From the NCBI GenBank assembly GCA_907165135.1, contig OU015566.1, positions 8,680,001 through 8,744,000 of the forward strand: DNA of 64,000 bases, read 5' to 3'. Position numbers and translations under genes: made by a program. Under the pieces are notes generated by a model. The model was not told the DNA's origin. It ran no database searches and saw nothing but the letters and a program-made list of their open reading frames with translations. This DNA comes from Oikopleura dioica (taxonomy: Eukaryota; Animalia; Chordata). Below are positions 6,066-28,373 of this stretch, one piece after another (position 1 is the first letter of the stretch; the number at the start of each line of letters is the position of its first letter).

Positions 6066-9000
6066 TTATTCGCTGTCAGATGATTCCATCGGTTGCTGTT
6101 TTTCGCGGCGCACTCGATAAGGGCTCTAAATTGGGAGATTGAAACCCGGTTATTCAAAAAATGGACTTACTCGTTCGTGATGTAAATTTCGAACACCTCC
6201 GGTAAGCGTTTCGCGGGTTTCTTCGACTGTCCTGTGAGTTACTGTTTTGGTGATTGTTGTGATCTGAGATTTATATCAGAAAAGTAAGTTGAAGATTATT
6301 TACCTCTGTATCGCCATCTTGTCTGGTTTTGACATCAGTGTCAACATGTTCATCTTTATGAATATTCGACTGGACGTCATGTGACATGTATTCTTCCTGT
6401 CCCTTTAATTTTGTTATTGTATGCCTTGGAGATTTTTTCTTACTCTGTAATGCTCTTCAACTTCTGAGAGAACGCCTTCGTCGCTTCTGAACTGCTTCGT
6501 GACTTTCTTGGTTGTGATCTTTTTGACTTCGGGATTGACGTTCACGTCGACGACTGTTCTGAGAACCTTGTTGCCGGACATTTTCAGGTCTTCGGAGAGA
6601 ATGGTAGCTTGCTGAGGTCGACCACTGATCGTCACTTGGTTTGACTGAAATTTTCTTTTGCAAAAATAGTTATTTTAAAGTTCTTACAGAATGCTGCTGC
6701 ATAATATCAGGCGAAAAAGTGCCGATCGGCGAACCAAGATCAGACGGAAGATCGATATCCGAGTTGCCAGTATCCGTGGTGAATCCACCCTAGAGTTATA
6801 ATTAGCTTTAAAAATATTTGAGAGTCTAACCTTAGAGTGAGTTGTCCACGTCTTGTGCTTTTCGGATCTGTAGCCGGCGTCGGTGGTGTTGTCAGTTTCC
6901 TCAACCTCGATATTGTACTGTCCTTGTTCGCCTTGCCAAGTCGAGTGGGAAGCTAGGGAGCTCTCAGAGCCCATGACAACAGCTAAAACATTGATAAAAA
7001 CCACAATACTGATCAAAGTTTGAATCTTCTATATTTTTTCTACTCTAGAACGAAGGTAAATTTATTCTTGTCCTACAATGAATGAAATCTTAGAGACCTC
7101 TGATAAGAAAAACTACTGTAGTTATGTACATGTATAATTATGTAATATTTTATGTATAAAAACGATGCCGTCAATATCCATTAACTTACTTGATGGAGGT
7201 CTGGAGCCTCTACCAGCCATTGGTTTGATCCACATTCTTGCTGTTCTCATCTCACCAAGACCCCATAGGTTTTCTGCTCGAACCGTGTATCGATATTCCG
7301 TGTTCTCAACGAGATTTTCGACGAAGAGGGATCTGTGATCTGGTCCCGGAAGTGGAACGATCATCGGTGGAATTCCAGAATCTATGAAAATTTTATCACC
7401 AGAAAGAATTGATTGGTACTTACGCTCATCGATTGTATGGTATTCAACGACGTAGGATGTAATTTCGCCGTGGCAATGGGTTGGCTCACCCCAGTTGACC
7501 TGCAGAGAAGTGGGAGAGAGGAGCTGGAACGCCAATCTCGATGGTTTTGATGGCGCTAGAATCATTTAAGGCATGTAAATAGCAAGATTTCTTACGTAAT
7601 CCCGGAGTCATGATCGTGATTGTTTCCGAAGTGGCGCTGTTACCAAACTGGTTGATCGCAGCGATCATGATCTCGTACTCAGAGCAAGGATCCAAATCAA
7701 GCAAGACGACCTTAATTGTCAAAAACTTTTGCATGAAATTCTTCGCTTACATTTTCTTCATCGCCAGAAACTTTCATCAGCTTCACCGACTGCCGAGATG
7801 TCTTTGAGTAAGTAATTTGATACTCGCGGACATAGCGCTGGAAATCCCACATGACAACGCATTGCGTTGCGTGGACTTCGGTTTGAATGTTCGTCGGGGC
7901 ATCCACTAAAGTCAATGATAAAATATATAAATTGTTATAGAAGATATTAGTAAGAAGCTTTTTCGAAACAAAACATATCCTGCTGCCTGCTAACTGAATC
8001 TAAAATTTTTGAATTTCTTTATAGTAAGAGAACATACAGCGATCTTCAATGAGTTGCATCTGAGTTCTAGCGATGCTCTCCGATGTCTTAGCGTCGGAAA
8101 TATAAACCCAGCAAAGAGATCGTTTCTTTGGAATCTTGTCGATGAGTGGAACCTCGATATGAGCTTTTTGTTGGCCATCCTGAAGACAGTTTTTCATAGA
8201 AATAATAAATCGAGATAAATACCTTGAAAACAATGAATCCAGACGCCCAGTTTGGTGGCTCCTCTCCTTCATTCTCTGAAACTTGATCATCAGAATCCTC
8301 TTCGTGAATCTTTCTCGACCATCGCGTGTGCCATTTGAGTGTCGATACACCAGAGGTAAATCTTCTTTCAACTGGAATGATCGCCATCTTCTCGGATAAT
8401 CGGTAGGTCAGGTATTTTTCAGAAAACACGAATTTTTCTTCGGCAGGGAGGAGTTTGACGTAGCATTTTTGATTAGTTCCAAGCGAACACTTTCCTTGCG
8501 GCTCGATGAGGACAACCTTGAACTCGAGGAAATCGTTGGCGTCAAGTTTGGTATTTGCACAAAGTGGGACTTCTATCGTCTTTTCTTCTTCGCCATCGTC
8601 GAAGAGAACGATGCCCTGAAAATGAGTCTTTCTTGAATCCTTTCTTTTATTTACCTTTGTGTCAACATAATGGACACCAGCCTTGGCCGTGATCTCCATC
8701 GTGTTCCAGAAACAACCGACTTTGCCATCGCGTCCATTCAGTCGCTTGACATCAATCTTCGCGATCTTCTTGTCAAGATTTACTTCGATTCTGCCTTCAG
8801 AGAATGTCAAGCATCCCGGATCTAAAGGGTTGGTTATTTACTGATTTTCTCAAGAAAATCACGGCAAATCAGAAAAACACTCAGGGTGGAAAATCTGTCT
8901 CTCCTGCAGTACATCTCTGATCTGCCTTCTTTAATTTGAGATTTTCACTTACAGATGTCGTCGAGCACTTTGAAATCGACTTCAGAAATCCTAAAAAAAA

Positions 9001-12000
9001 TATTTAATTTTGTATTAATTTTGATTTTCTTACAAAGAGTTTTTATCAACAATTTGGAGTTTGACTGGAACAGACTTTGACTTGATAGATCTATCAAAGA
9101 GCGTGATTTGGACAAGCGCCGTATCCTGACCAGGCGCAAACTGCAGCTCGCCAGTTCCCCAATTCTGAGGCGGCTGAATTAAAAGTTTAATATTCAAAAT
9201 ATTTTCGCTCGAAGAATTCTACCTCAGCCATAGCAATTGCTTGCCATTTCAGTCGAAGACCATCCTGCGTTGATCGTCGTTGAATTTTAATTGTAGCGAC
9301 TCTTTCCGACATCTTGTAATCTCGGGCATCGAGAATTTCAATATCATTGAGAGTGTTGAACTCGACGAATTTGGAGTATCTACTCTTTCCACGCCTGTTG
9401 ATGGCAATAACTCGAGCTTTGTACATCGAATCAGGAGACAAGCCACCGATAACTGCTGTAAATTCATCGTTTGAAACGATCTTGGACTTTTCTCGACCAG
9501 TACGGAAGTCTCGAACAGCCACTTTGTACTCTCCCACGGGACCACCAAGTCTTGGCTTGCTCCAATTGATTCTGACTTCTCTGCTTGTGATATCGCTGAC
9601 GGAGATTTTGCTTACTCGGCCAGGGATGCCTGTATCGTTCACGATGGTTATCGATATTTCTGCAAGAATCTCTCCTCCAGGTTCGCCGATATACAGCGCA
9701 TTCTTCTCCTTCATTGTGATCATGTCAGCGTTAAGCTTGATCGGCAACGACATGCTTTTGACTCCCTTGTCGAAATTGATGACACCAGAAGAAAGAGGTT
9801 CAGGCTCGTCAGAGTTTGACAAATCAGAAGACTCATTCTTCGGCATATGGATGACTTTCCTCATCATGCGCCACGAAAGAGTCGTCTGGAACTCAGTTGT
9901 ATTTCGAGTTACTGTGATTTCAGCGCGTCCATCAGACGAGTTAAATTCGTAGTCAGATTTGTATGTCAAGGTTATTGCTGGCAAAGTTTTGATTCTCACT
10001 GGAAGTGGTGGTGCTTTGTTTCCCGCAGAATTACGCGCGATAACAGTGATGTTATACTTCTTGTCCGGCTCTAATTCGAGACAGCACGAAGTCACTGTTG
10101 ATGGTAAAACGTGCTCATTTCGCTGATTTTCTTTGCCTTCTTCCCAGTAGAGCACGACGTACTCACTTGGAGGTCCACCAGTTTCAGGCCTCTGCCATTT
10201 CACTTCTGCTTGCTGGTCGGCAACAAGGTTGGCAGATTGATGAAGCACCTGGCCAGGCGATTCAAGATGAGAGCCCACGTGAACTTCAGTAACAACGCAT
10301 GGACCAAGAGTATCTCGTCCAGTAACGCCGGATAGAGTCAAATTGAAGACAATTGGTTTTCCAGAAGGATCGTTTTCTACTGCCAACTGGATGTTTGTTT
10401 CCTTATCACCAGGGCGGAAGAAGGCTTTGCCGCCTTGAGGACGGTAGAGAGCATCAGATGGATTCACTGGCGTTCCAAACCATTCAACAACAGTTCCGAA
10501 CGCAGCTCCTTTCGATCTAATCAGTGCGATTTCGACGAGATCCTTGCTCAAGTCAACTTGGTAGGACTGTCGTTTGAATTCAATCAGACCCATTCCAATG
10601 TCGTTGAGAACCTTGAAATGGCAACCTCTTAGTTTGTTGTCAATAATAGCTTGTCCGGTCGGGTCTTCAAGAACAAGGTCGATTTCTTCGACAGGAGTGT
10701 TTGGATTCGGCTCCGAAGGCATTGGCATTTCAATGACAGATTCGTACTGTCCTTTTTCGAAGATAACTTTTCCCTTGACAGTATTCCACGGCGAATTGTG
10801 ATCAGAAGAGCTAACATGCCAGGGAACTTCGATGCGTTCTTGAGCTGTTTCTCGTCGAGCGACGTGTAGGAAGCAACGTTTGTTGCTCTGTTTGAATTCT
10901 AACTGGCCCTGTGTCGTTGGTTTCATGGAAACGATGCTTCGTTTTACATCATTGGCAATGTTAATTCTAGCTTGGCGTCGTCCAAGTGCAATCTTTTTGT
11001 CATCAAGTGAAATTTGAATATCGAAGGAGCTTTGCTCAGACATAACCGGGTCTTTTTCCAAGAAGATCTTGATTAATGCAACCCCTGAGGAGTCGGAAAA
11101 CTCGACGAAACCAGAGAGACTATCATAAGCTCTGCTACTACTGCTTGTTTTCCAGGCAACCGACATGAGGGCAGAAGTCTGGATTGATCTTCGGACAGGA
11201 ATTTCAATAACACCAGCAGATTGTTTGAAGAAAAACTCGCTTTCTCCAAGTTCTACCGTAATTGGAGCTAAAATATAGTTTAATTTAGAAAAACAAATAA
11301 ATAAAAATGTGCTGGTGCTAGCGTGCTTAAAACGTGATATATAATAATTATCGCCAGTAGCTCTAAAATAATAAAGAAAATAGTAATATTGACTTACAAA
11401 CATCATTCAAGATTTTCACAAAGCATTTGTTATTTCCCAATTTTGGTGTGACTTCTGAAGATTTTGGATTCGCCAAAGTAACTTCAAGCATTTCAACGGG
11501 CTCATCAATTTTCGGCTCTTGGCTAAGTGGAATAGGGATTTTGACATGATCCATCTGCTCTGGAATTTCGACTGTGCCAAAGTCGCCCTTGTCCGTCGAC
11601 CAGTCGCACTGCACCTTGCAGAATTCATATCCAGAGCGACGAACCATCACTTCCACAGTTTTGTCAGACTGCTTGCATTCCGCTTTTGAAGTTGGGAATT
11701 CAATCTTTGGTGGCTCCAAGTCATTCTCAATTTGCAAAATGACAGTGTTGCTGGTACCAGAGATGCAGGGCATGCATTCGGATTTGGCTGCGCCAGGGTC
11801 GCAAAGTGAAACAGTGACGATCGAATAAGGTTCAGCGAGTGGCTTTTGTGGCAGTTTTAGTAACACGACACCATCGACTTGGTCAGACTGGAAGGTAGCG
11901 ATACCGTCCGAATTGAGTCCTGCCATTTGAGGTGGACCATCGATCTTCCATTTAACCCAAGAGACAGTGTCGACTCGGCCAGTTCTTTCCAGTGGCAATG

Positions 12001-15000
12001 AAATAGAGCCTTGCGATTGCTTCGCCTTAATTTTTCCTGTTGATACTTTGAAGCCGACTTGGTTAGACGTCAGATCATTCTTTATCTTCACACTTGTTGG
12101 CTGTGGCACGTCAATTGTAGAAATTCCAGCGCCGATTGGTGCAAAGGGAACGAAATCAAAACATTCTTCTTCATCAGAAGTCTCATCGAGTGACAATGGA
12201 ATCGAAACAGATGCAGTCAAGGATCCATCAGCGAACTCTATAATTCCAGAGAGCTTGTCATATTTTTTGCTTTCCGATACTGTCTTCCAGGGAAGTTGGC
12301 AGGCGCCACCTGGAGCGGATCGAGTGTATGTGATGACCGCTTTTTTCTCAGACTGCTTGACGACAACAGCTGGCTGTGATGGCTTCATCTCGACTCCTTT
12401 GACATCCATGTCAACTTGAATAAGTGCCTTGGAGTTTCCAATCGCACAAGCTTGGCGGGAATCAGCAGTGTGGATATCTGCTTTGACGAGTTCGAAGTCG
12501 ATTCCGATCGCATCCAACGAGCTCGGACTAGATGGAAGGGCCAGATTAATGGCTTTCGAAGGCTCTGCATCTTTGAGCTCAATGATTCCTGTTTGAATAG
12601 GAAAGTCTGGTGTATCTGGTTTCGCGATCCATGCAACTTCGATTGCAGTCGGAATCGGGCTCTCTGATCGCGTAACTAGAATTGATGCACTTCCGGAGGT
12701 TTGACGCGCTTGAACGAGCGCTTTCGAAACGGAAACATCTATCTTCGGCAAAGCCAAATCGTAGGTTACTTTTAGCGGAAGAACACTTTTGTCGCCAATA
12801 TTGGAGCCTCGAACGGCTTCGATGGCAATTTCGATGACTTCTTCCTTTACGATCGACGGGAATTGAGGAAGCTCGATTTCAATGTCTTTCATCAAATCTG
12901 TCTGACCAAATTGCAACAAGCCTCGTAGATTGAATAATGGGCTCTTCGTATTAGGAGATGTTACTTTCCAGCCAACGAGACCTTCCGCCTGAATATTATT
13001 GCTTCTGATGATGGGAATGGCTATCTTTCCGGAGGATTGCTTAGCTTCGAATGACTTCGATTTGAATTCGAAGACTGGTAAGGGAACATCATTCATCACA
13101 GAGATTTCGTGAATAACTTCGTCGCCAAGTTCACTGACGCCTTCGACTCCAATGAGTGCAACTTTAATCTTTGTGACTGGCTCATCGAAGGATAACTGAT
13201 CAAGGTGAATTTCAATCAGTCCTTCAGAAACTCCATCGGGAATGATCATCGTCTTTGGTTCTTTTTGATCAACAGAATATGCAATTTTCATATCCCCAGA
13301 AAGATTTTTTGATCTTTTTACAGGAATTTCGACAACGGGGGTTGACTGGCGACTCACTGTTTGTTTCGGGAGGACGAAGTCAACCTTTGCTTTTGCGACA
13401 TCATGAGCGACGGTAACGTGACAAGAAAGGTCATCAACAGTTTGAGAAATCAGACCCTTATTTTCGGGAATATCGATGATTATATCAAAGTCTATGCTCT
13501 CTATCTTTTGGACATCTTTGGGAACATTTATGATGATTTCACATGTTCCATCTGCATTGATTTTCGCCTTTCCACTGAGTTTGTATCCAGGAACAGGCTT
13601 CTTTGCTTTCCAGGCGATTTCGCGACCAGCAGCAGATATGGGTGAGGTCAATTTTAGCTTGATATCGCCATCAGACTGGTTGAACTGTATGTTTGGACTT
13701 GTGAATTTGTAGGCCGGACAGTCGTCAACAACTTTGACTTTGCATTTGGGATTGTTGATGGAGACAAATGGCGCACCGGTAACCTCACGAATGAAGACTT
13801 CGTATTCCTTAACTTTGACCATGTCAATATCCATTGAGATAACAGCTTGGCTCTGATCTCCAGAGAAGATAATTTGTCCTTTCTGTTCATTTTTGAGTCC
13901 TTCGGAATGCCATGAAACAGTTATTTTCAATTTTGGCGTTCTATTGTTCGCGACGCATGTGACGGGAAGCTCCACTTTGCCAAGGCGTTTCGATGCAACG
14001 CAGATTGGATCAGAGAAATTTATCTTTGTCGGTTCGATATCGTACTCGATGTTTACAGTGGCCGCAGCTTGAGCAGAAACCATTTGATGCTCCTCTGTCG
14101 ATGGAAGAAGTTTGACCGTTACTTTTTCGGTTGTCACGGAAATCGGAGTAGGATCGAATTCCATCTCGATGTTGGCCTTGGAGCTGTGGGCATCGAAAGT
14201 GATAAATTCAGGCTTTCCCGTATTCCATTCGGAAATTTTAAGCGGAGAGCTCGTCTTGTATTCCAATTTGCAAGGCTTGGTCAAGTTGTTAAGTCGTCTG
14301 ACAGCAACATTGCCAACAGAATCTGACTGTTTGAAACTGAAATCATCTGACGAGAATTCAAAGAACGTCAAATTCATCTTGACATCAATCGTCGCGGTCG
14401 AATTATCGCCAAGGCAGGCATAAGTTCCTTTCGGCTCGTAAAGTTCGATTTCAGCATGAAACTTCTCTTTTTCAAACATTGTTTGAGCAATCGGAAGATC
14501 GAGAATATAAAATTCTTGCGTCTCATCAAATGCGAGTCTTCCTTCAGACATCTCGAAGGGATGAGTATCTGTTGTCAGTCTCCAACGAACTGATGCCAAT
14601 CCAGCAGAAGCAGATCGCTTGACTGGAATGCTGACATGATTTTCAGACTGAAGAACCGAGAATTCAGCCTGATCGAAGTCAAATCTTGCTGCTTTGAGAT
14701 CGTTATCGACGACGAATGAACAGGTCATTGGTATGACGACTTCTTCATCATTGATAGCTTCGAGCTCAACAGTGACTTCATCTTTTTTGTGATGACCAGG
14801 GGTTTGATCGAGTTCGACGTCAATTTTCTTCTTGAGCTCTCCATTGAGAAATTTGATTTCGTAAATTTTGTTGTAGAAGGGATTCGAACTGCATTTTTGA
14901 GAAAGCTTGAGAGTAGCACTTCCAGACGCGTTCCCGCTTCGAGTAATTGTAAGCTTTCCAGAACTGTCAGATTGAGTGAAAAATAGAGGTGATGTAACGC

Positions 15001-18000
15001 CAGCTTCGAATTGAAAATTGGCAGGTTTGATATCGTACACAAGCTGAACTGTACATTGCTTCTTTTCTCCAAGTTGAACTGGAGCATCAGGAATAAGTGT
15101 TACTGTGAGCTCATCGTCAGAGAGGTCAGGCACCGGTGATTGACTTATATTAATTTCTAGTGTTTGGAGCTCTTCATTTGGTTGGAATGAAAATGATCCA
15201 GTTAGGTTGTTATAAGGTGATTTTGCACCAAATTTCGAGGAGATTTTCCAATTGACATTAATGGCGTCAGTTTTAGCGTACATTCGGCAGACGGGCAAAA
15301 CAAGTTTCTTGTCCGATTGCACAACACTTGCTTTTTCCGTGGTAAAGGATACAGTAGGACGTTTGATGTCGTTGATAACAGTAACTTCAGCTGCGTGTAT
15401 AGCCCCCAACATCGGGTTGTTTTCACCTCGAGGGTCGTAAAGCTCCACGCAAAACGTGTCTTCATCCACATCTTGTGGAGCTTGTGGGAGGTCGAACTCG
15501 ACCTTGAAGAGACGACTATCTCCTGTGAACTTGGCATTTCCGGTGAGATTTTCGTAGAAAGATTTGGCTCGCGCGTTTGCAACTTTCCATGCGACAACAC
15601 ATTCTCCTTCGCCACCTCGGACAACGGCAACGGAAAAGACTTTTTCTGATTGACGGACGGTAATTTTCTCGACTGGCAGTGATGTCGTCGGTCTCGATAT
15701 GTCGTTGAGAAGAGTGACGGCCATAACTGGATGCTTTCCTAACTTAGGTTTTCGGCGTGCTGGTGAGTTCTGCTCCTCTTGGTCATCAAGAACTGGTACA
15801 GAAAGAACAACAGTGAAGATGACGTGTTCATCCGGACTTGGATCACGAGAGACAGGAATAACAATTGTTCTGTCAACATCACCAGCTCGGAAAGCAACTT
15901 CTCCTTTGATAGCGGCAAATTTTGGATCAAGTGATTTGACGTGGTACTTTGAGCTGACAGGGGTATTCAAAAAGCCAGATCGGTTTATATGAAGTGTGAT
16001 ATCGCCGTCAGACTGCTTTGCCATTATTTCATTCACCAAAAAGCTCAACATCTCAGCTTGGATATCGTTGTTGACGAAAACTTTGGCTGCATTCTTTGTT
16101 TTGTGACCTTCTGGATGATGATCGCCGCCAATTCCGCCAAGACGTAGCATGAGTTTGTTGCTTTCCGCCCAAATCGGAAAATTTGGAAGCTTGAATTTAA
16201 TCTCCGTTGTGCTTTCACCGTCGTCAATCATTTCTCGTCCGCCGACGCCATAGTAAGGAGAGTGCTCATTCGTCACGTCCAAATACCACGGAATAAGAAT
16301 TCTACCTCCCATAAATCTACTTCTAGTAACTGGCAATGAGACATCTCCATTTGTCTGTCTAACTTTTGTTTCAGTTAGATCAAGGGAAATTAAAGGCCTT
16401 GGAATATCATTTTCAATAGCTACTAGAGCCTCAGTTTGTGTCATTTCAGTGCATCGACCACCAACAGGGGGTTCCATAACAATCTTAGCGATGTTTGCGG
16501 AGAATTTTTGCGGAACTTGCACCAGCTTGAATTGGATTGTGGCTTCCTCAGATCCATCCTTCAGCTTTACCACGCCGCGTTGTCGTTCATAGAAGGGATC
16601 TAATGGGTTTTCATGATCGGCGTCCACAACATGCCATCCAATTGTCACATCACCAGTGAGATTTGGCGGGGATCTCACAACTTTGACATCCAAAACTTCT
16701 TCGCTCTGCTTACAAGAGAAGCTTGTCTTTGGCAAAGAAATGATTGTTGCTTTTAGATCGCTCTCAACGCTGACTTTAGCAAGAATATCATCACCGAGTT
16801 TTGGCAAACATGCGCCTTCAACAGCAACCAGAGTAAGGGTGTACTCATCGAGATCAATATTAAGAGGGGTCTTCGAGAAGTCGACTTTGATAAATTTCAA
16901 GTCTTCTCCATCATCAAAACGTTCCCACTTTTCTTCATTGATTCCACTTGTCGAACAAATCTGGCACTTTACCATAACAGGGCCATGTTGGCTAAAATCT
17001 CGCTTGATGGGAACCATGAGATGATCATCTGATTGTCGGCACGTAAAGTCGATTTTGTCGAAAGAAATAACTGGGATTTTGACATCCTGGGAGACAACGA
17101 TTTTGAAGTTAGGCTCTTCAATTTCCGTCATCAATCCACCTCGAGCCTTTTCAATTTCAATGATGTAAGTAGCTTCGAGAACTTCCGATGGTGTCATATC
17201 GATTGCGATTTCGACTTCTTTTTCATCAGCATCATCTGCGTCAAAGAAGACGACCCCTTCGATTGGTCGGAATCCGGGAAGATCAGCTGAGATTTTGTAG
17301 GGAATAGTCACACAATCTGCAGAATTTCCTGATCGAACAATCTTCATTTTGATGGGACCATCAGATTGTTTGGCAGTTTCAGGCTTGATCACGGCGATTT
17401 TGGTGGGCTTGACATCGTGAATAATGTCGATCTCAACATTTTTACATTCTAGTGTCGGACAGCTGAAACCTTCAACATTGTCCATCGAGATAACAATCTT
17501 CCCCATATCACCAGAAAGTGGAACATCAGGAAGAGGGACCTTAAAGTCCATTTCTTCTTCGCCATCTTTCATGATTATTGATCCTGTGTGTCCGTCAAGA
17601 TCACCGCCGAAAATTGAATAGTTTGCTTTGAGCTCGCCTTCGAGATTACCGAATCGTTTCATAGTAAAATCAGCATGTCCAGAAGATTGCAGTGCCTCTG
17701 CTTGCTTTGATTTGACCTCCACGTGACTTCGTGGCAAATCATTGTGCACTTGGAAAACAGCTTCTTTCTTCGGCAAGTCAAATGAATGATCGCTTATGAT
17801 ATCAGTGATGATGACTTTGTAGTTGTCAACATCGGTGTATCGAGGAATGGTTTCAACCGGAATTGAAAAGCTGGCTTCAACTTGTCCCGGAGCAAATGAC
17901 ACTTGAGTTGTGAGGATTTCTTGATTCTCTAAGACGACTTGAGCACTTATGGTCATTGGACAGTCGGCGAATCCTTTACGCAAAAGTGCAACTGGAATTG

Positions 18001-21000
18001 ATCCTGCTGATCGGACAACCATCTGCTCCAATTCGATCACTTCTACCGCGGATGGTTTGATGTCATTCTCCACTGTCATCGTCAAATCTGGCTGCGAGCC
18101 TATCTTACAAACGTCATTCTCTCGGTCAAGACAGACTTGGAAGGTAGAAAAGCTTTCACCGATCGGAATTTTTGGCAAATCAAACTCAATATATCCAAGT
18201 GATTGTCCATCGCCGAAGTTGACCTTTCCTTTGAGCGCAGAAAATGCTGGATGGTCAGATTTAACATACCAGTCAACAGAAACCTCCTCCCGCATGTTCG
18301 TTGTTCTAGCTACAGGAATACGAACGCGTTCAGCACTCTGCTTCAAGTTAAGTTCTGGGAGATCAAAGCTTGCTTTTGGGAAAAGCACGTCTTGCACAAG
18401 ATTGACTGTGCATTTGATATTGTCACCGAGAAGGAAATCTTGATCTTCATCAGCTCCAAGAAGTTGCAATTCAAGTTCAAGCGATTTCGCTGCAGAGGGT
18501 TTCTGGCAAACAGCTAGCTCAATGAATTTTTGATCTTCGCCGATTTCGAATTCCAGAGTTCCAGCATCTTTGCGCCAGTCTCCGGCAAAAAGTCGCTCGC
18601 CATTTTCTCGCCAGCTAACTTTGATTGCATTTGCGGTTCCATCTCGCTTGACTGGGATTTTAATAGTTCCATCGGTCTGTCGCGCTGTCAGCTTTGCATT
18701 AGAAAACTCGACAATTGGCCACTGAATGTCATTCTTGACAAGAATTTCTAGTCTATTTGGATCTCCGAATTCGGCATCGCCGTCAAGGCCAAGAAGCTCA
18801 AAAATATATTTCGCGTCTTTTTCTTTCATCGGATGCGTGGGAAGATCGATGACAATGTCTTGGTCGAAGTCGCCGTCTTTGAAGTTGGCTTGGTATTCTT
18901 TCATGAAACTTTCATCGCCAAGATGCGTCTCACACTGCCACCGAACAGTTGCGTCTCCGAATTGGAATCCGCTACGCTCAAGTTTCAGCTTCAACTGCTT
19001 GTCAGACTGTTTTGGTTCATCTGTTTGAACGGAGAAACCGATCTTTGCCGGTTTGATGTTGTTCTCGATTCTTATGTGGCAATTGAGAAGCTCGCCCAAC
19101 ACTGGTTGAGTGACGGGGTCAAGAATGATGTCGAACTCGGCCTCGTTAGCGCCTTTTGTGACGAGTGGCGATGTGAGGATAATTGACGCTGTGGACTCGC
19201 CAGGATTGAAGACGAGTTGTCCATGGAAATCCTAGGAATGTCACTTTCATCACATGGTGGCCAACTTACCTTGTAATCTTGTCCATTCGACTTTGGGTCA
19301 ACTTTCCAGTTCACGACAACTGGGGCGGTCATCTCCGACGATCGGAACAAGGTAATTTTATGAACACCATCTGATTGCTTGAATGTAAGAGACTTCTCAG
19401 CAAATCCGACTTTTGGCCATCCTAGAAGAGAAAATTAACTTAGCCATCTTTAGAATTGATACACAGCACCACATGCTCCTAACAAGTCAAGAAAACTCGT
19501 ACACACGTACGAGTTTTCCATATCAAATATATTTTCGAATCTTTCGTTCAATAAATTGAATATTCAGCTGGGACTCACGAGCTTTATATTCGAGAAAGAT
19601 AGAAAATAGCAGAAAAAGTCTTGATAATTTATTCTCCTTCGCGCTTGCCCTTCTTCCTGATAGAATTAGTAAAGTCACTAAAATACACCACTTCAAGAAA
19701 TTGATATTATTTTGAAACCACAAATCTTCTGCTGACAATGCTTATTTGCGTCCTTTTATCCTGCTTTTTGATCATATAATGCTACTGCTCAGTTCGAGTT
19801 TTTTGACATTTCATAAAAACTCCCGACTTATTATCATAACCGTGGTCATATCATAGTAGTAGCTAGACAGCATCAAGTTAGGAAGTGATCACCACATGCA
19901 GAATTTTCGAAAACACCACTACGAACTTACAGTGATTCCCCATTTTCATATCGTTTTGAGCCATCAATCTTCAACTTGTGTCTTCGTTGATTTCAAAACT
20001 GACCGTTCGGTGCATTTTTTGTAAAAAATCATAGTGCCCTGCTGTGTCTGCATAGTGTGATTTTTGTGCATTGTGTAAGGTTTTAGTAAAGAAAGCAAAG
20101 AATGCCGAAGTTAGAATTTTGTGAGTAGCTGGAGGAAATTTTGAATTCAAAAATTTGAAAAGATGTTGTGTCAATAACTCACTGATGTCGTTTTCGATCT
20201 TGACTTCTAAGCGCTGCTCGCCATTCTGAATTTGAAAATGGTTTCCTTCATGTTCTTTTTCGGTGCTTTACCTTCAGTCGAGCTCCTCCCTTTGGTCTAT
20301 CGAGGACAATGAAGAAAGACTCGTCTGGGAACTCTTGTGGCTCGGTCGGTAGATCAAGGTGGATCCACAGCTTTGTCTCTCCAGAAGCAAAATCAAGCTC
20401 TCCACTTATTCCCTTGTAGGCAGTATCTTAATTCGGTAAGTATGATGATTAAGTTATAAAAGAACATACGTGTGCTGGAGAAGGGTTGAAGTCTCCAAGG
20501 CTGGGTAACATCTCCATCACTGACTTGTGTTCGGACAACGCAAACGCTCAACCGTCCATTTGATTGTTGTTCAATTTTAGGAAGAGGATCGTAGAAGGCA
20601 ATTTCTCCAGCAGCTAAAACTCTTTTAAAACTGTACTTTGAATATTTTACAAACTTTTATCATTGAGAAGAGACACGGAACACTGAGTTTTGTCGCCGAG
20701 AGAAGCATTGATAGGTTGGTCGAGAGTGATTGTGAACTTTTCCTCTGAGTTGTCCTGTGGCATTTCTGGAACATTGATAGCAAGATCAAGACCTTCATCG
20801 CCACTTCTGAATTGGGCAGTTCCAACAAGACCTCGGAAATATGATCCTTCGGGAGCATCGACTCGCCATTTGACTGTCGCTTCTTCCAAGCATCTTTCAT
20901 GACGCAGAAGTCGTACAGTAATATTTCCATTTGACTGGAGCTGTTTTACAGACTCATCACTAAATTCAATGACACCAGGACCGAGATCATTGTTGAGTGT

Positions 21001-24000
21001 AACGTGACACTTTCCTCGTCGATCTTCCAAATCATAAACGACTCCAGGTTTGAGCTCAACATCGAACTCTTCCACAAGTGGCGTGCCAGAAATATACATT
21101 TGCTTAAATGGAATTCGCACCTCGTCAAATTCCTGTCCATCAGCAAAGTTGAGAACCCCACTGAGTGGCTCGGGAGAGGTGTACGCAATCCAAGGAACAG
21201 TGAGATTTTCCTTGTTCGAAATTTTTCGCTTGACAATGAGAATCAGTTCGCGAGTAGATTGATTAGCGTTGACCTTCGTCTCCATATATCCAATCGTTCG
21301 TTTAGGTGAGAGAATTGTCAACCTGTGTTGGTCGTTGTCACCAATTCTGACGCCATTATTCGACTTGAGCAGTTTGACGAGAAGACACTGAGACTGACCA
21401 GATGGGATGTAGGAGATAGGGATTTCAATAGGAATGCGTTGAAGACCAGCCGGTACTTGAATCGTGCTAACAAATGCTTCAGCGAGCTCAGCTGCGACAT
21501 TCTGATCTACAGAAACTGGGAGAAGCTGGTACTCAAGGTCAAACTCCACCCGATTTCTGCCATCAGAAAGTGCGAGAACTGTTGTCATAACGTCAGTATC
21601 GTGAACAAGAATTTCACTGGATTCGTCGTCGAAACCCACTCGACCACCTTCGAGGTCATTGTGGACTCTAACGGTCAGGCTAGGGACTGGACCAAGTTCA
21701 GCTTTTCCAACAGGTTTGTGCAGCTTGATTGTGAATTCTTCGATAGGAACATCTGATGGCTGACAGTTCAGTGGGAAGTCGATGTGAGTTTCCGATTGGC
21801 CATCATCAAACATGATTTGGCCATTATTTCTGTCATACCAATTATCAGATGAGACAGACCAGCCAACCGGTAAAGCACCGCGATTTCCTCGCGATCGAGT
21901 TAGGGGCAATTGGACAATTTTGTCAGACTGAGAGACTTCCAAGAAGTCTTGAGTAAAACTGACTTGTCCGGGATGCCCAGCTGGAGGAATTGTTATAACA
22001 CAAGAGTCCTTCAATCCAATTCGTCCTGGTCCAGTCGCGACCAGAAGTGATAGTGTGAGGGATACAGGTTCTTCAAGGGGTGCATCGAGCAGATTGAGGT
22101 TGATGACTTTACGGGACTCATTCGGTTTGAAAACGAGCTGTTCAGATTGAGTAAGATAATGTTCGCCTGGTTGAGCAGTATCTGGCTGAGTAGCGTACCT
22201 CAAGGACACGAGATCTTCGAGCTCGCCTTTTACAATAACACCGACGGCAACATCAATTGCGCCGATGTCAGTCGTGATGAAGTCGGTTTCAAATTCAAAC
22301 TCAACGTCTTCGCTCTCTTTGAGGACAGAAATATTTGCCATATTTCTAGCGCCAATAAGGCCATCAGAACATTTGAAAAGCTGAACACAGAATGACTCTG
22401 TATCGGACTTCATTTCCTTGTCGATATCAATTTTTATGATCTGCTCGTGAACTCCTTCGGCGAAAACGATTTCACCAGAGAGGCCATCGTATTTCTCGAG
22501 ATCAGATGAAGCAGACCAGTCAACCTTGACCTCTCCATCAGCACCTCCTTGACGAGCGACAGAGAGATCAATTTGGCCATCATTTTGGCGACAAACTGCT
22601 CGTGTCTTTCTGAACTCGAAGGATCCAGGTTCATGACCACTGATGACTTTGATGATGGCGTCAGGGTATTTTCCCAGCGAAACTGCTGCTTGTCCGCTAA
22701 TCGGTTCGATTTTTACGGAAAGTGACTTGTTAATAAGCAGTTCGAGCATTTCGGTAGGGATTTTCAAGAAAGAGCGATTCTTTGATGCAGCAAATTCAAT
22801 TGAACCAGAAGTTGGGAAGCCTTTTCTTCAAGCATGTCAGTGTGGTCTACAAATGACCACTTGATCTCAGCAGGCTTCTCCAGCGAGCCGATTCGAAGGA
22901 GCGGAAGACCCTGATCACCAGATTTTGCCATGAAAGAAAATTCAGGGCGAGCGAAAGAAATCGAGCAAGGAGCTTGATCAGTCAAGAGTTGAATCGAACA
23001 TGTTTCCTGACCAATTTTACCCATTCCAGAAACGGAATCAATCTTCAATTGCATCTTTCGCGAAACCATCTTTCCATGATTGCCAGGAATGAATGTGATT
23101 GGCACAGAAGCTTGGAACTGTCCGTCTTCGAAGAAAACCTTTGTTCCATCTTCGAACTCGTAGTGAACCTGATTCACTGCCGAGTCTCCGACAGAGCTAA
23201 GTTCTATCTCCAGTGGTCCGTCGGTGCCTCCGTGTCGAAGGATATGAATGTTTTGCTGAATGTCGGCGACTGGGAAGGTCACTTCTGGAACGCCGAAGCC
23301 AACAGTGCCAACGTGTCTGTCATTGATGACATTGACAACAGTTTCCGTTAGATTGCCACCAGTTGTGTTTGGACCATAATCGGAAAGAGAATGTTTTAGG
23401 AGAATTTGTTCGCAGTCCATTAATGGCAGAGGTAGAGTTAGTTCTTTTTGAGACTCGTTAGGTTCAAAGCGAACCTCAACAGGGATCAACTCACTCTCAG
23501 GAAGAATCGAGCCTTCAATTAGCTCTAGATGAATAACACAAGAGGCCTGGCGGTCTTCTTTGCCGATTCGCTTGACAGTCAAAGTATAAGTTTCTTCCGA
23601 AAGTCTGCAAAGATGCTTTTCTTGAGTGAAAGAAATCTTCGCACTATTGCGCATGGCGCCTCTGACATTTTGCTGTCGGACAGCTTCGATTGGATTCGTT
23701 ATCAAGATTTCTTGAGAGTCGCGAGTTACAATGACGGAATCAGAAATTGGAATGATTTTGCAGGTGAAGATAAGGTCATCATTAGTTTCGTCGTCGATCT
23801 CGTCGTCGACGAAAATCTTGACTTGCTGGAGAGTCTCGTTAGCATCAAAGATGACTGCCTTCTTAACAGCAGAATAGTGATGATCTTCTGCTTTAGCAGT
23901 TCCGTCGATAGTTTCAAACAGAACGACTGATGCTTGAGGAGGATCCAGGCGGATTTTTCGCTCCAAGTTTACAATTAATGGAGACATTCCAGCGCCGCGA

Positions 24001-27000
24001 AGAATTGTTGGGTTGACAACGTTTAGCTCAACTTCATCAAAATGTCCTTTTCCGTAGATTTTGACGTTTGTCGATCGTTGATGACCAAGACGAGCATTAT
24101 TCGTTGGCTGCATCAATTCGATAATAAGATTTGTATCTTCTTCTCGGTCGACATTCACATTCAGATCGATCGCGCCATCGATTTCCATGTTTTCAAATAC
24201 TAAGGTGCCCGAAGTTGTGATCTCGTCGGGAACTGAAGAGCCATCTTGTGTTCTAATGACCCATGGGAGTTTGACGGTCCCGTCGGCACCCATCGATCTC
24301 ATCACAGGAATAATGGCTGCCTCTTTGCCAGCTTTAAAGACATAATTGCTTCGCGCAAGCTCAAAACGTCCCGGGTCGTCGTCTTCGATGATCTTAATTT
24401 CACAGTTGTTGAGTTCCATCTTTGTTCCATCAGATGGCTCGTAAAGCTCGAGACCAAAAGTTCTTCCTTCTTCAATGTATCGATCGTTTTCAATAATGGA
24501 AACTTCAATGAGTTTCTCAGTTTCTCCATTCGCAAATTCTAACTCGCCCTCAACTGATTTATAGTCAACCCCAGCCCTAGCGGTAATATCTCGAGTTCTG
24601 TATCGAACTGAAGATCTGCCTTTTGTTGATCTTGTTCGGATAACTGGAACAGCTGCTTTCTGGCAATTTTCTAAGAATGGATAGGACTGTCTGAGGAATT
24701 GAACAACAGATACAGTCTCGTCATATAGAAGAGTGACCATGCATCTGTCGCAATCGAGAGTAGCACCGCCGAGAGGATCAAAGAGTTCGAGGTTGAATGC
24801 TTTTTCACGGCCATCAAAGATAGAGTCTTGGAAGAACTCGATCTCGATGACTTTTGAGGTTTCGCCGTCTTCGAAAATGATTTCACCTGATGTTTGTCTG
24901 TAGTGCTGGCCACCAATGGCGGTCATATCTCGAGACTTGTACGAAACAACAACTCGCCCGTCGATACCATTGGCACGGTGAATTGGGATGAGCGCAGAGT
25001 GGTCCGCCTCTTTGAAGACGTACGAGGGCTTGGCGAAACCGACGGAGCCAGGCTCGTCGTCTTTGATAATAATTACTTTCGTGCGCTTCTGTCCAAAGTG
25101 AACTTCCTCTGGTCGATCAATTAGCTCCACGATAAAAGCTGCCTCTCGGCCTTCAAATTGAGGGCCTTTGATGTCAATATGGATGTCTGCGAATTCTTCT
25201 CCATCTTTCCACTCGATTTGGCCCTGGCCCCAGTTTGTCTTGCTCAAGAGTCGTTCCATCTCTACGGAGTTTCCATCGCCTCTAGCGAGCGAGCTTGCCA
25301 GAGTACCACTTTCTCCTTCCCGAATCAGTCGGAAATCATCATCCGCCACGGAGACAGGGAAGGTGCGCCATTTGATAGACAGATTGCCATCAAATACAGA
25401 TCTTCTCACTGGAATTACAGCTACTGTTTGCGAGCGTTTCATGAAATATTTGGCTTTGATGAACTCGACGAGGTAGGCGATCGTTGGGAATCTAAACATT
25501 TTTTATTGTTTGTTTGTCCTTCAGAAAAATTTTATCCTCAAATTCGAGAATTTTCGGAGGCATGTTAAAATTGTCTTTAATCATAAGGATTGACAGTTGA
25601 TTTGGACAACATTAAGGACCAAATCATATAATCAACAATTATTTTATGGTGTTTCACATGATATCTGTCAAAAAATATTTTCGACCAATAAGATTGCGCG
25701 ATTTTCAAAAAAATAAAAATTTTTTTTGGTGAAATTTTTAAAATGACTTGCCTCTTTTCGCGGTCAACGCAGAAAACGCAAATTCTCCAGCAGCACAAGA
25801 ACAGTAGCCCGATCAAGAGAGCAGCCAAAACCGCCCATAGAATAATGATAAGAGAGTATTCGATTCCGCAATGAGGATCGTCTTCTGCCCAAACTTGGAT
25901 ATCGCCATTATCTTTCTCGTAATATTTGTAGTAAAACTTGCATGGTGGCTCTCCTTCTCTAGCTTGAGTCATTGCAGAGCAGAGCTGGCCAGCTTCAGAG
26001 GAGTATTTTGCCGTTTTATCATCTCCAGCTGGGACAAGCTCTGATTTACCAACGAGTGTATACGTAATCTCTGAGTTATCAGACTTCGGGCAGACATCGT
26101 CGCAGTCTTCTTTATCGTCAGAGTGGTACTTACACTCGATACAAGCAGAGAAAGTCTTACAGTTGGCGCACGGTTTTCCTCCGCAATTTCTTGTATCACA
26201 AAAAGGACCAGTCCAGTCGTCCGATTCGCAAATGCACTTTCCACACTTGCATTCTCCTCGACCGGAGCAAATTTCTGCGAAGCTATCAGCCCTGCAAGTT
26301 TCCTGAGAAGCCGGACACTCGCAGAAATCTCCCGTCCAGCCCTTATCACACATACATTTAGAAATCCCTCTGCCGTCGTATTTATCGCACACGCATTGGC
26401 CATGATCGGAGCAAATACCGGGCTTGGTTCCATCAGCTCCGTCGTTGTAGCAGTCAGTATTTGAGCACTGACACCACTTGCCAGAGATGATTCCCGACTC
26501 GATTTGATTGCACTCGCAGAAATTCTTCGGGCACTGTCCTTGGCCGGAGCAAATTTCTGTTGGCATTTCTGGATTTATACAATCAGTACAGTTTTGTCCT
26601 GGGGTAGGACAGGGCGGCCGTTCGAATTCGCACACGCTCCCAAAGAAAAGATCGTGGCAGAGACACACGCCGCAGGCAAAGTCGCCGTTTCCGGAGCATT
26701 TGATCGAGTTGGCTTCGATTTGCTCCATGCAGTCGAAATTGCATCGGATAGTTGTGTTGATGAGAAGAAAATCGTCATATCGCTGAGTTCGAACTTTCAA
26801 CTCTCCCCACTTGCTTGTAGTTCTGCAGGTATCGGAGCAGTAAGTATCAGGGTGAACCGATTGACGAATCGTATACTGAACGTTGCTATTCTTGCTCAAC
26901 CCTGTGACATCCTCGCCGTCGGTGAACTCCTTAACAACACCCTGTGCGTCAGTGAAAACAGCTTCAGTTCCAAGACAAACATCCTTCGCGTCAAGAAACT

Positions 27001-28373
27001 CTTTTGTGTTGAGCACCAAGTGTTGTTTTTGTGTAATAATGTTGTAAGCCTTTTCAATAAGGTCAAGGATATTCTTTGACTTTTCCTCCAAAATCTCAGC
27101 GGAGCCAACTTTAAAAAGCTGCTCAGTGGCGTTTTGGTAATGATGAAGCTGGCCTTTTCGAACGGCAAAGATCGGAATGATTGAGTTTTCTTCGAGAACA
27201 TCGACGACTTGCTTGATGGTCGGATAATCGCGCTGGTCACCACGGATGTATTCGTTATTTTCAAGATGACATTGATCATCAGCCGGGTCGATCAGACCTG
27301 AAAGCTTGCCCATGCCACTTCCGCCTGAATGGAACCAACTCTCGGTCGCCAGAACGAGGAGCTTGAGTGTGTTGTGCTGCCAGCCAACTTCATCTCGGCA
27401 AAGAACAGCTTGATACATTGCTTCAAGAGCGCCCTCTGGTCCATCGAGATTTCCAGAAACATGCTCGTTCTGCATATTCTCCGTATATTTGGTGATGTCG
27501 TCGGTGAGTGGGTTCACATTCTTGTACAAAAACGGGGAATCGACTTCGAAGTTGTCCCTGTACGGTTTTTCCAAATAAAAAGGTGTCATTTCCGTTTGAG
27601 GTGAGATGACTTAGATAGATGCAAAAATGTGTATTTCCCAAGATCTAAATATAATATGTAAAAAGTCTAAATTTTGCATCATTCCTTTATCCACAAAAGT
27701 ACCGAAGCCGATTCTCACCATTGCTTCTTGATTTGTGAGCTCTCTCAGCTTCTTCGCAATTTCGCCTCCCATTTTCTTCATGCGTTCCATATCATCACGC
27801 ATCGAATAAGAAACATCCATAAGATAGTAAAGTTCGGCTGGATAAATTCGCGGTTCGGTGACATTGAAGAGCAAGTCTACACTGTCGCCAACTCGGATGA
27901 TGGCGTTGGCGTCCTTAGGGAAGATGCGGTCTTTCTCGGGGTTGAAATCGGCATTTCCAGTGTAGACCTTCGATTCCACTGTCTAAAAATAACCATGGTG
28001 AACCTATTTTATTGGCAGGATAAATGATAGTGTTAATGTGCTCTTTACGAGTAGAGAAATTAATGTGCTTAAATACCTGAACATCTTGGCACTTGAGGGT
28101 TTCGAGATTAGCTGGTAGGTCGCAGCGACCGTATTGAAAAGACTCATCGGCGCACCAGCCGCAAAGTTCGTTTGCTCTGATGCAGTCGCACGGATTTTTA
28201 GCGATGTGGCATTTCGTCTTGTGATTTTCTGCACCTACCCATCCCTGAAATTTGCCGCACTCCGCCTGGCCCCGACTCGTCTTCTTACTGTTCTCTGTCT
28301 GTGACTGTAGTTGCTCGGCCGGTGCGGCAGCTGCTAGGCATCCAAGAACGATGCCCAGCCAGTGCAGGATCAT
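6066..28373 (-). CDS. ITGB4: Giant integrin beta subunit, beta4-like: PSI, vWA/betaI, EGF, TM, then about 40 or more Calx-beta and 4 FN3 domains (about 6,500 aa)
   Basis: Signal peptide at 28373, PSI domain (CGWC), MIDAS YYLMDVSYSM, and beta4-type features DKVISPQTEM, GNLDGPEG and LATES. Cys-rich EGF repeats precede a TM followed by CCWRICVFC. Phase-compatible introns join ORFs 25577-27589, 22764-25499, 20647-22767, 11363-19102, 9187-11406, 8088-8810 and 7122-7915. The last FN3 pair resembles ITGB4 FN3-1/2 (PSKPSRLAF..GEIT..VENL..YRYTVRA). One frameshift near 22823. Last exon SPYRVRREKQQPMESSDSE*. Confidence 0.8.
10260..25491 (-). repeat. Tandem array of Calx-beta (NCX CBD-like) protein domains, about 110-120 aa each
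   Basis: Recurrent pattern (V/I)xF....QS...IPVxR..G...VxW.....GxxxFxxGE..K.I.I.L......F.V.L....LG.....V.NDI over about 4,700 aa. The repeats are divergent at nucleotide level. Confidence 0.88.

What the first reader, a model, noticed from the sequence alone, without database searches (positions are those of the whole stretch)
6066..28373. Giant integrin beta4-like receptor with a cytoplasmic tail of about 5,800 aa made of about 40 or more Calx-beta domains
Seen: a complete integrin beta ectodomain and TM splice through a GC-AG intron (25751-25492; DREKR|FPTIAYLVEF, phase 2) into Calx-beta ORFs. I could chain these with phase-compatible junctions down to FN3 domains and a stop at 6066. Known: most beta tails are about 50 aa, and vertebrate ITGB4 has about 1,000 aa with ONE Calx-beta and four FN3. 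Beta4 hallmarks are present here: DKVISPQTEM, TES, a juxtamembrane Cys cluster and an FN3-2-like PSKPSRLAF..ENL..YRYTVRA. Inference: the single Calx-beta was amplified about 40-fold into an intracellular rod, possibly over 100 nm long. This would hold the cytolinker-binding FN3 pair far from the membrane, as a hemidesmosome-like spacer or spring in an invertebrate chordate. I know of no described integrin with this architecture.
Basis: partly seen in the sequence, partly recalled or inferred. Interest (0 to 1): 0.95.

Follow-up and report, generated by a model that had tools for sequence, protein, structure and literature searches.

The report
Splice-tunable giant integrin beta4 tail
A planktonic tunicate's version of the cell-anchoring receptor integrin beta4 carries a chain of 15 to as many as 46 repeated domains inside the cell, where vertebrates have two or three, and alternative splicing changes the chain's length, so it may set how far the cytoskeleton is held from the membrane.

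Summary
The gene is real: 25 minus-strand exons (28373-6066, up to 6,614 aa) encode an integrin beta ectodomain, one membrane helix, 46 Calx-beta repeats and 4 FN3 domains. The ectodomain groups with vertebrate beta4 (100/99). Relatives lacking the intron read from the helix straight into repeat 1.

- The break at 22823 is a 1-nt homopolymer slip, not a splice.
- Repeats 16-46 lie in three phase-1 cassettes. RNA shows them skipped: tails of about 2,170 aa (15 repeats) and 2,410 aa (17 repeats). The 5,800-aa form was not seen in RNA, although its exons are conserved repeat for repeat in two other species.
- The terminal FN3 pair corresponds to beta4 FnIII-1,2, with both plectin-binding arginines; FnIII-3,4 is absent.
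- Lamprey and fish beta4 hide a second, split Calx-beta with an SEA-like insert, so the seed was already a tandem.

Best reading (inferred): a beta4 orthologue whose splice-adjustable Calx-beta chain (about 60-190 nm) spaces a plakin-binding end from the membrane. Only repeat 3 keeps calcium ligands. No paper describing it was found. The scan had noted only this same stretch before.

The parts
28077..28373 (-). Exon 1: ATG, signal-peptide-like N-terminus, PSI domain
27685..27982 (-). Exon 2: start of hybrid and betaI domains with intact MIDAS (D-x-S-x-S) and ADMIDAS aspartates; followed by a GA-AG intron (27684-27610)
25752..27609 (-). Exon 3: rest of betaI (TES motif), hybrid, I-EGF repeats, beta-tail, the single TM helix and the juxtamembrane Cys cluster
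25492..25751 (-). GC-AG phase-2 intron between the TM exon and repeat 1; absent in relatives; the joint itself was not listed in RNA reads (too few reads)
20655..25491 (-). Exon 4: Calx-beta repeats 1-14. Repeat 1 is split by an insert, repeat 2 corresponds to the canonical vertebrate beta4 Calx-beta, repeat 3 alone keeps a near-complete acidic Ca2+-ligand set
22820..22826 (-). 1-nt deletion in an A-run inside repeat 8 (probable assembly error); read through in frame in transcript L025 and in relatives
20183..20613 (-). Exons 5-7: repeat 15, ending at the conserved phase-1 alternative donor 20183
11398..19421 (-). Cassette 1 (exons 8-9, including a 7,834-nt exon): repeats 16-39; skipped in the RNA seen; open and under purifying selection in two other species
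8953..11267 (-). Cassette 2 (exons 10-12): repeats 40-42, FN3-a, repeat 43, FN3-b, repeat 44; skipped in the RNA seen
8038..8821 (-). Cassette 3 (exons 13-15): repeats 45-46; joined directly to 20183 in most reads of run X5
7190..7905 (-). Exons 16-19: FN3-c and FN3-d, corresponding to beta4 FnIII-1,2; both disease-mutated arginine positions kept in FN3-d; joined directly to 20183 in run X6 and in transcript L025
6066..6982 (-). Exons 20-25: connecting-segment-like and Thr/Val-rich C-terminal tail, stop at 6066; no further FN3 pair

Best explanation
This is the larvacean orthologue of integrin beta4. Shown: one gene; a type I membrane protein with an intact metal-binding betaI domain outside and a single TM helix; inside, a tandem array of folded Calx-beta sandwiches followed by the FnIII-1,2 pair and a beta4-like tail. 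Shown: a conserved phase-1 donor after repeat 15 is spliced to at least two different downstream acceptors, giving 15- and 17-repeat tails. Inferred: the other two phase-1 acceptors are used in some tissue or stage, up to 46 repeats plus two extra FN3. Inferred mechanism: the ectodomain, paired with a laminin-type alpha chain, grips the basement membrane. The terminal FN3 pair binds the actin-binding domain of a plectin-type plakin, as in vertebrate hemidesmosomes. The Calx-beta chain is a semi-rigid, mostly calcium-independent spacer of about 4 nm per domain (about 60 nm short, 70 nm middle, 190 nm full), so splicing sets reach and compliance much as in titin isoforms. Repeat 3 may act as a Ca2+-sensitive hinge near the membrane.
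For: Tree 100/99 with vertebrate beta4 under a site-mixture model. TES motif is almost confined to that clade. Continuous ectodomain-TM-Calx ORFs of 1,875-2,180 aa in relatives. No second TM-like segment in the large tail exons. AF2 model of repeats 17-19 has pLDDT 88 and its best matches are NCX1/CALX CBD12. Same-position orthologues are 35-86% identical against 24% between paralogous repeats, so number and order are old and fixed. The giant exon is 55% identical with saturated fourfold sites and no stops. Splice borders are conserved in three species. Isoforms are seen in RNA. FN3-d best matches FnIII-2 and keeps arginines at the positions of R1225 and R1281, which are needed for plectin binding (PMC4452579). 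An open CBD12 tandem spans about 80 A (PMC13370880).
Against: No RNA with exons 8-12 included was found. There are no localisation or binding data. FnIII-3,4, where BP180 binds in vertebrates, is missing. A plectin-type partner in this genome rests on an unchecked scan note. pTM of the three-repeat model is only 0.61, so a straight rod is not shown. Some distal repeats are 70-83% conserved, more than a passive spacer needs.
Confidence: 0.6

Rival explanations
1. Scaffold rather than spacer: the repeats are individually specialised docking sites, and splicing adds or removes binding sites (including FN3-a and FN3-b). The chain may lie along the membrane or fold back, so its length is incidental.
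For: Repeats are not homogenised and differ widely in conservation (repeat 24 at 83%, repeat 26 at 76%, others 35-45%). Cassette 2 adds two FN3 domains.
Against: Large blocks of 24 and 5 similar domains are switched together. Conservation of inter-domain contacts in a rod could also explain the variation.
Confidence: 0.22
2. Exons 8-12 are never joined to the integrin. They form a nested soluble Calx-beta/FN3 protein made from an internal promoter or by trans-splicing, and the receptor's tail never exceeds about 2,400 aa.
For: All spliced molecules seen skip this block. The intron before it is the longest in the gene (761 nt; about 2.6 kb in L014).
Against: The block starts at a conserved phase-1 acceptor in frame with the donor, at the first strand of a repeat. 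The first in-frame Met in the window (codon ~31) is absent in L014. It ends at phase-1 donors, not at a stop. X5 loose ends are mixed (agreement 0.74), so further acceptors may be in use.
Confidence: 0.13
3. Calcium sensor or buffer: the array binds Ca2+ along its length, as NCX CBD1 does, and stiffens or signals in response.
For: Calx-beta fold with best structural matches to NCX/CALX CBD12.
Against: Only repeat 3 has acidic residues at 9 of 10 scored ligand positions; the other scored repeats have 0-5, mostly 1-3. The vertebrate beta4 domain is described as cation-independent (title of PMID 19622870, cited).
Confidence: 0.04
4. Artefact: two adjacent genes, or an assembly chimera, joined by the reader.
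For: The TM-to-repeat-1 joint was not listed in RNA, and the assembly has a frameshift.
Against: Several independent metagenome assemblies encode TM and Calx-beta in one ORF. A spliced transcript joins repeats 6-15 to the FN3 pair and the stop.
Confidence: 0.01

Closest known systems
Vertebrate integrin beta4 (ITGB4) of hemidesmosomes
   Same: Same clade by ectodomain tree; TES motif; Cys cluster after the TM; cytoplasmic Calx-beta (repeat 2 aligns with the canonical one); FnIII-1,2 with both arginines; Thr/Val-rich C-tail; no membrane-proximal NPxY.
   Different: 15-46 Calx-beta repeats instead of 2-3 (one in the literature); tail of 2,170-5,810 aa instead of about 1,000; no FnIII-3,4 after the connecting segment; two extra FN3 inside the array; length set by cassette splicing.
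Ciona Ci_beta5 (Ewan et al. 2005, PMC1145181)
   Same: Tunicate beta4 orthologue; short Calx-beta-like ORFs were noticed within 10 kb downstream of the predicted gene end.
   Different: Its tail was never resolved. I did not recover an ascidian beta4, so whether ascidians share the expansion is open.
ADGRV1/VLGR1 (35 Calx-beta repeats, about 6,300 aa, PMC13729602)
   Same: Giant membrane receptor built on a long Calx-beta array with splice isoforms of different length.
   Different: Its array is extracellular and belongs to an adhesion GPCR; here it lies behind the single TM helix, in the cytoplasm.
NCX1/CALX CBD12 tandem
   Same: Cytoplasmic tandem Calx-beta; best structural matches; repeat 3 keeps the acidic ligand pattern.
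   Different: Two domains in an exchanger loop; most repeats here lack the ligands.
Titin I-band (functional analogy, from my own knowledge)
   Same: Tandem beta-sandwich chain with conserved position-specific domains, and length changed by exon skipping.
   Different: Different domain family, soluble sarcomeric protein, no homology.

Membership tests
Integrin beta subunits | Signal peptide, PSI, betaI/vWA with MIDAS, hybrid, I-EGF, beta-tail, single TM | tested here: met
Integrin beta4 clade (orthology) | Ectodomain groups with vertebrate ITGB4 to the exclusion of the beta1/2/7 and beta5/6/8 groups and invertebrate betas | tested here: met
   FastTree SH 99 on 137 rows; IQ-TREE LG+C20 100/99 on 36 rows. 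Exon 3 only, no AU test, no named beta3 or ascidian row.
Integrin beta4 clade (orthology) | Glu in the betaI TES motif instead of the usual Asp | tested here: met
   Of 93 scored hits, 81 have Asp and 12 Glu; most of the 12 are beta4-clade rows
Integrin beta4 clade (orthology) | Cytoplasmic Calx-beta domain | tested here: met
   Repeat 2 aligns with the lamprey and fish canonical domain
Canonical vertebrate ITGB4 architecture | FnIII-1,2 pair with the plectin-binding arginines in FnIII-2 | tested here: met
   FN3-d best matches FnIII-2 of lamprey and fish, arginines aligned. The mapping to human numbers 1225/1281 and the FN3-c = FnIII-1 assignment (position and motif, no BLAST hit) are from my own knowledge.
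Canonical vertebrate ITGB4 architecture | Second pair FnIII-3,4 after the connecting segment | tested here: not met
   No FN3 hit downstream of 7190; the spliced transcript ends without it
Canonical vertebrate ITGB4 architecture | Tail of about 1,000 aa with five globular domains | tested here: not met
Canonical vertebrate ITGB4 architecture | Pairs with alpha6, binds laminin-332 and plectin, nucleates hemidesmosomes | not testable with these tools
   needs localisation and binding assays
Calx-beta domain | Seven-stranded beta-sandwich matching NCX CBD structures, also in the distal repeats Pfam misses | tested here: met
   repeats 17-19: pLDDT 88, top Foldseek hits NCX1/CALX CBD12
Ca2+-binding NCX CBD1-type Calx-beta | Acidic ligand cluster (A-strand Glu, EF-loop and terminal Asp runs) | tested here: not met
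   near-complete in repeat 3 only; ligand positions taken from the CALX alignment and my own knowledge
ADGRV1/FRAS1-type extracellular Calx-beta arrays | Array lies on the extracellular side of the membrane helix | tested here: not met
   the array follows the only TM-like segment

The most novel reading that the evidence does not exclude
Larvaceans make an integrin of about 6,600 aa whose cytoplasmic Calx-beta chain acts as a splice-programmed molecular ruler of about 60 to 190 nm, holding a plakin/intermediate-filament anchor at tissue-specific depths. This would be a titin-like element built into an adhesion receptor, grown from a Calx-beta tandem that is still present but unrecognised (split by an SEA-like domain) in vertebrate beta4.
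Probability: 0.4. Interest if true: 0.9.

Novelty: new variant of a known kind. Interest (0 to 1): 0.76.

Why it matters
Most integrin beta tails are about 50 residues, and beta4's 1,000-residue tail is treated as the exception, with its Calx-beta domain of unclear use. Here the same lineage carries a tail two to six times longer, conserved repeat by repeat across species and cut to length by splicing. That gives a natural length series in a tractable animal for asking what the beta4 Calx-beta region does and how membrane-to-filament distance is set in an adhesion junction. It also bears on the point left open by Ewan et al. 2005: tunicate beta4 does have a Calx-beta/FN3 tail, so the fusion predates vertebrates, while FnIII-3,4 is either a vertebrate addition or a larvacean loss. 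A by-product concerns vertebrate beta4 itself: the roughly 250 residues between the membrane and the known Calx-beta domain appear to be a second Calx-beta domain with an inserted SEA-like domain (shown for lamprey and fish by HMM, and for lamprey by a model).

Tried and rejected
- Splice at 22823: rejected. No intron restores the frame without deleting a conserved strand, and a transcript of another lineage has one more A and reads through.
- Donor at 20651: rejected, because it breaks the phase of all later exons. RNA gives 20655.
- Two adjacent genes: rejected.
- Recent tandem amplification or homogenisation: rejected. There are no DNA tandem repeats in the gene and paralogue identity is 24%.
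- Extracellular array: rejected.
- Search for spliced protein fragments that include cassette 1: blank. Only proteins of 220-700 aa were candidates, so this says little.
- No indexed RNA run held the stretch; the reads used come from a lineage under 90% identical, at low depth.
- No ascidian or named O. dioica beta4 was recovered; the length limits of the tool may explain this.
- Literature searches for Oikopleura or appendicularian with integrin, Calx-beta, hemidesmosome or oikoplastic terms found no description. The library lacks most subscription papers.
Full report
Setting. The window is a compact animal genome with introns of about 40 nt and non-canonical GA-AG and GC-AG introns. Earlier scan notes name it Oikopleura dioica; I did not verify the species independently. 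RNA reads filed under the same species label are all under 90% identical, so they come from another lineage.

Observation. Pfam places PSI, integrin beta vWA and I-EGF domains in 28379-25580, Calx-beta in the ORFs from 25502 to 8091, and fn3 in 11406-9190 and 7746-7125. A 25-exon model from 28373 to 6066 is open exon by exon with consistent phases and totals 6,614 aa, of which about 5,810 lie behind the membrane helix. The only strongly hydrophobic segments in the large exons are the N-terminus and the helix at the end of exon 3. One defect remains, a 1-nt frameshift at about 22823 in a run of A. A spliced contig of another lineage (L025) has one more A there and reads through, as does L014, so this is most likely an assembly slip. 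An iterated HMM built from the repeats finds 45 Calx-beta units plus one domain-sized gap. The order is TM, 42 repeats, FN3-a, one repeat, FN3-b, three repeats, FN3-c, FN3-d, tail. An AlphaFold2 model of repeats 17-19, which Pfam misses, has pLDDT 88, and its best structural matches are NCX1 and CALX CBD12.

One protein. The TM-to-repeat-1 joint was not listed in the reads, which are thin there. Relatives from marine metagenomes settle it. P0006 runs from the helix into repeat 1 without an intron. L022, L016 and L019 also have ectodomain-TM-Calx ORFs, and L030 and L032 lack that intron. These contigs are unnamed; that they are larvaceans is inferred from the tree and their gene style.

Orthology. 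The best full-length hits of exon 3 among 1.84 billion representatives include fish, sturgeon and lamprey beta4. The window and its relatives form a clade sister to vertebrate beta4: SH 99 on 137 rows and 100/99 on 36 rows under LG+C20. The branches are long and no AU test was run, but independent characters agree: the TES motif, repeat 2 aligning with the canonical beta4 Calx-beta, and FN3 matches to beta4 in the PDB. Ewan et al. found a Ciona beta4 orthologue and noticed Calx-like ORFs downstream but could not resolve the tail (PMC1145181).

The donor at 20183 and the acceptors at 19421, 11267, 8821 and 7905 are all phase 1, and so are the donors that close each block. In run X6, seven reads leave the stretch at 20183 and continue into the exon starting at 7905. 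In run X5, ten reads continue mostly into the exon starting at 8821, with agreement 0.74, so they are mixed. Both continuations map uniquely in the window, exactly at those acceptors. The fully spliced contig L025 independently shows 20183 joined to 7905 and all later introns as modelled, down to the stop. Shown isoforms are therefore about 2,977 aa (15 repeats, tail about 2,170) and about 3,211 aa (17 repeats, tail about 2,410). Forms of 3,952 and 6,614 aa are possible but were not seen.

The case for the longer forms is comparative. The 2,611-aa exon is 55% identical to L014 with fourfold sites saturated and no stops. Every repeat that L014 covers has a same-position orthologue at 35-86% against 24% between paralogues. 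A third species keeps all 24 repeats of cassette 1 in order, with the same donor and acceptor. No conserved start codon opens the cassette. The more distant L019 also has phase-1 introns at repeat ends and at least 20 repeats.

The FN3 end. FN3-d best matches FnIII-2 of lamprey and fish beta4 and keeps arginine at both positions that I map to human R1225 and R1281; mutations there abolish plectin binding (PMC4452579). No FN3 pair follows, so FnIII-3,4 is absent. FN3-a and FN3-b lie inside cassette 2 and match beta4 FN3 domains only weakly (25-29%). The C-terminal exons resemble the Thr/Val-rich end of lamprey and fish beta4 by eye. The only NPxY-like motif in the large tail exons lies inside a repeat.

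Calcium. Repeat 3 has acidic residues at 9 of 10 ligand positions and is the best-conserved repeat (86%); the others have 0-5. In NCX/CALX, Ca2+ bound near the CBD1-CBD2 linker stiffens an open tandem about 80 A long (PMC13370880). That gives about 4 nm per domain and suggests a hinge at repeats 3-4. Both points are inferences.

Origin. Fish beta4 has two full Calx-beta domains in tandem. In lamprey and fish, the two halves of a further Calx-beta flank a 130-residue insert just behind the membrane, and window repeat 1 aligns with them. A model of lamprey residues 760-1122 (pLDDT 77, shallow alignment) aligns over its whole length with the CBD12 tandem, and the insert matches MUC16 SEA domains (Z 8.6; weak Pfam SEA hit). 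The ancestral chordate beta4 thus probably already had a two- or three-unit tandem, which larvaceans extended long ago and then froze. The two ITGB4 papers I checked list one Calx-beta only; I could not search further.

Mechanism and verdict. Shown: gene, orthology, fold, repeat number, conservation and two splice forms. Inferred: use of the long cassettes, rod geometry, plakin binding and a hemidesmosome-like site. The best reading is a splice-adjustable spacer between a basement-membrane anchor and a plakin (0.6), ahead of a multi-site scaffold (0.22) and a nested separate product of exons 8-12 (0.13). It is a beta4 orthologue but not a canonical ITGB4, since FnIII-3,4 is missing and the tail is rebuilt. 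I found no description in the literature searched. I file it as a new variant of a known kind, interest 0.76.

Noticed in passing
P0004:760-1000 (lamprey beta4); P0002 and P0167 (fish beta4): Vertebrate beta4 appears to hold a cryptic split Calx-beta domain with an inserted SEA-like domain directly behind the TM helix; the fish proteins also have a second full Calx-beta after the canonical one.
   Followed up: partly
L016:6449-7459: A same-strand tetraspanin ORF lies between two blocks of the Calx-beta array of a distant beta4 relative, apparently nested in an intron. From my own knowledge, vertebrate alpha6beta4 partners the tetraspanin CD151; orthology was not tested.
   Followed up: no
L019:11584-13320 (minus strand): An opposite-strand 578-aa ORF without a Pfam hit is nested inside the beta4 gene of another distant relative.
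   Followed up: no
L015:10001-20205: A beta4-clade relative (P0178) whose TM is followed by about 600 low-complexity residues and a 1,245-aa ORF without domain hits before Calx-beta ORFs appear; possibly a paralogue with a different tail.
   Followed up: no
window:27610-27684: GA-AG intron in the betaI domain, required by the reading frame.
   Followed up: partly
P0121 (Branchiostoma, 2,761 aa): An amphioxus gene model that fuses integrin alpha-type repeats, a betaI domain, FN3, EGF and VWC domains; real fusion or annotation merge not checked.
   Followed up: no
window:1134-1886, 1991-2524, 35312-37423, 45823-47130: Neighbouring plus-strand ORFs: SGF29 tudor, chromodomain, a TSP1-pentraxin-trypsin mosaic protease and a UCH deubiquitinase.
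   Followed up: no
window:15368-16402: Repeats 24 and 26 of the giant exon are unusually conserved (83% and 76% to L014) among neighbours at 42-69%, and are candidates for specific binding sites.
   Followed up: no
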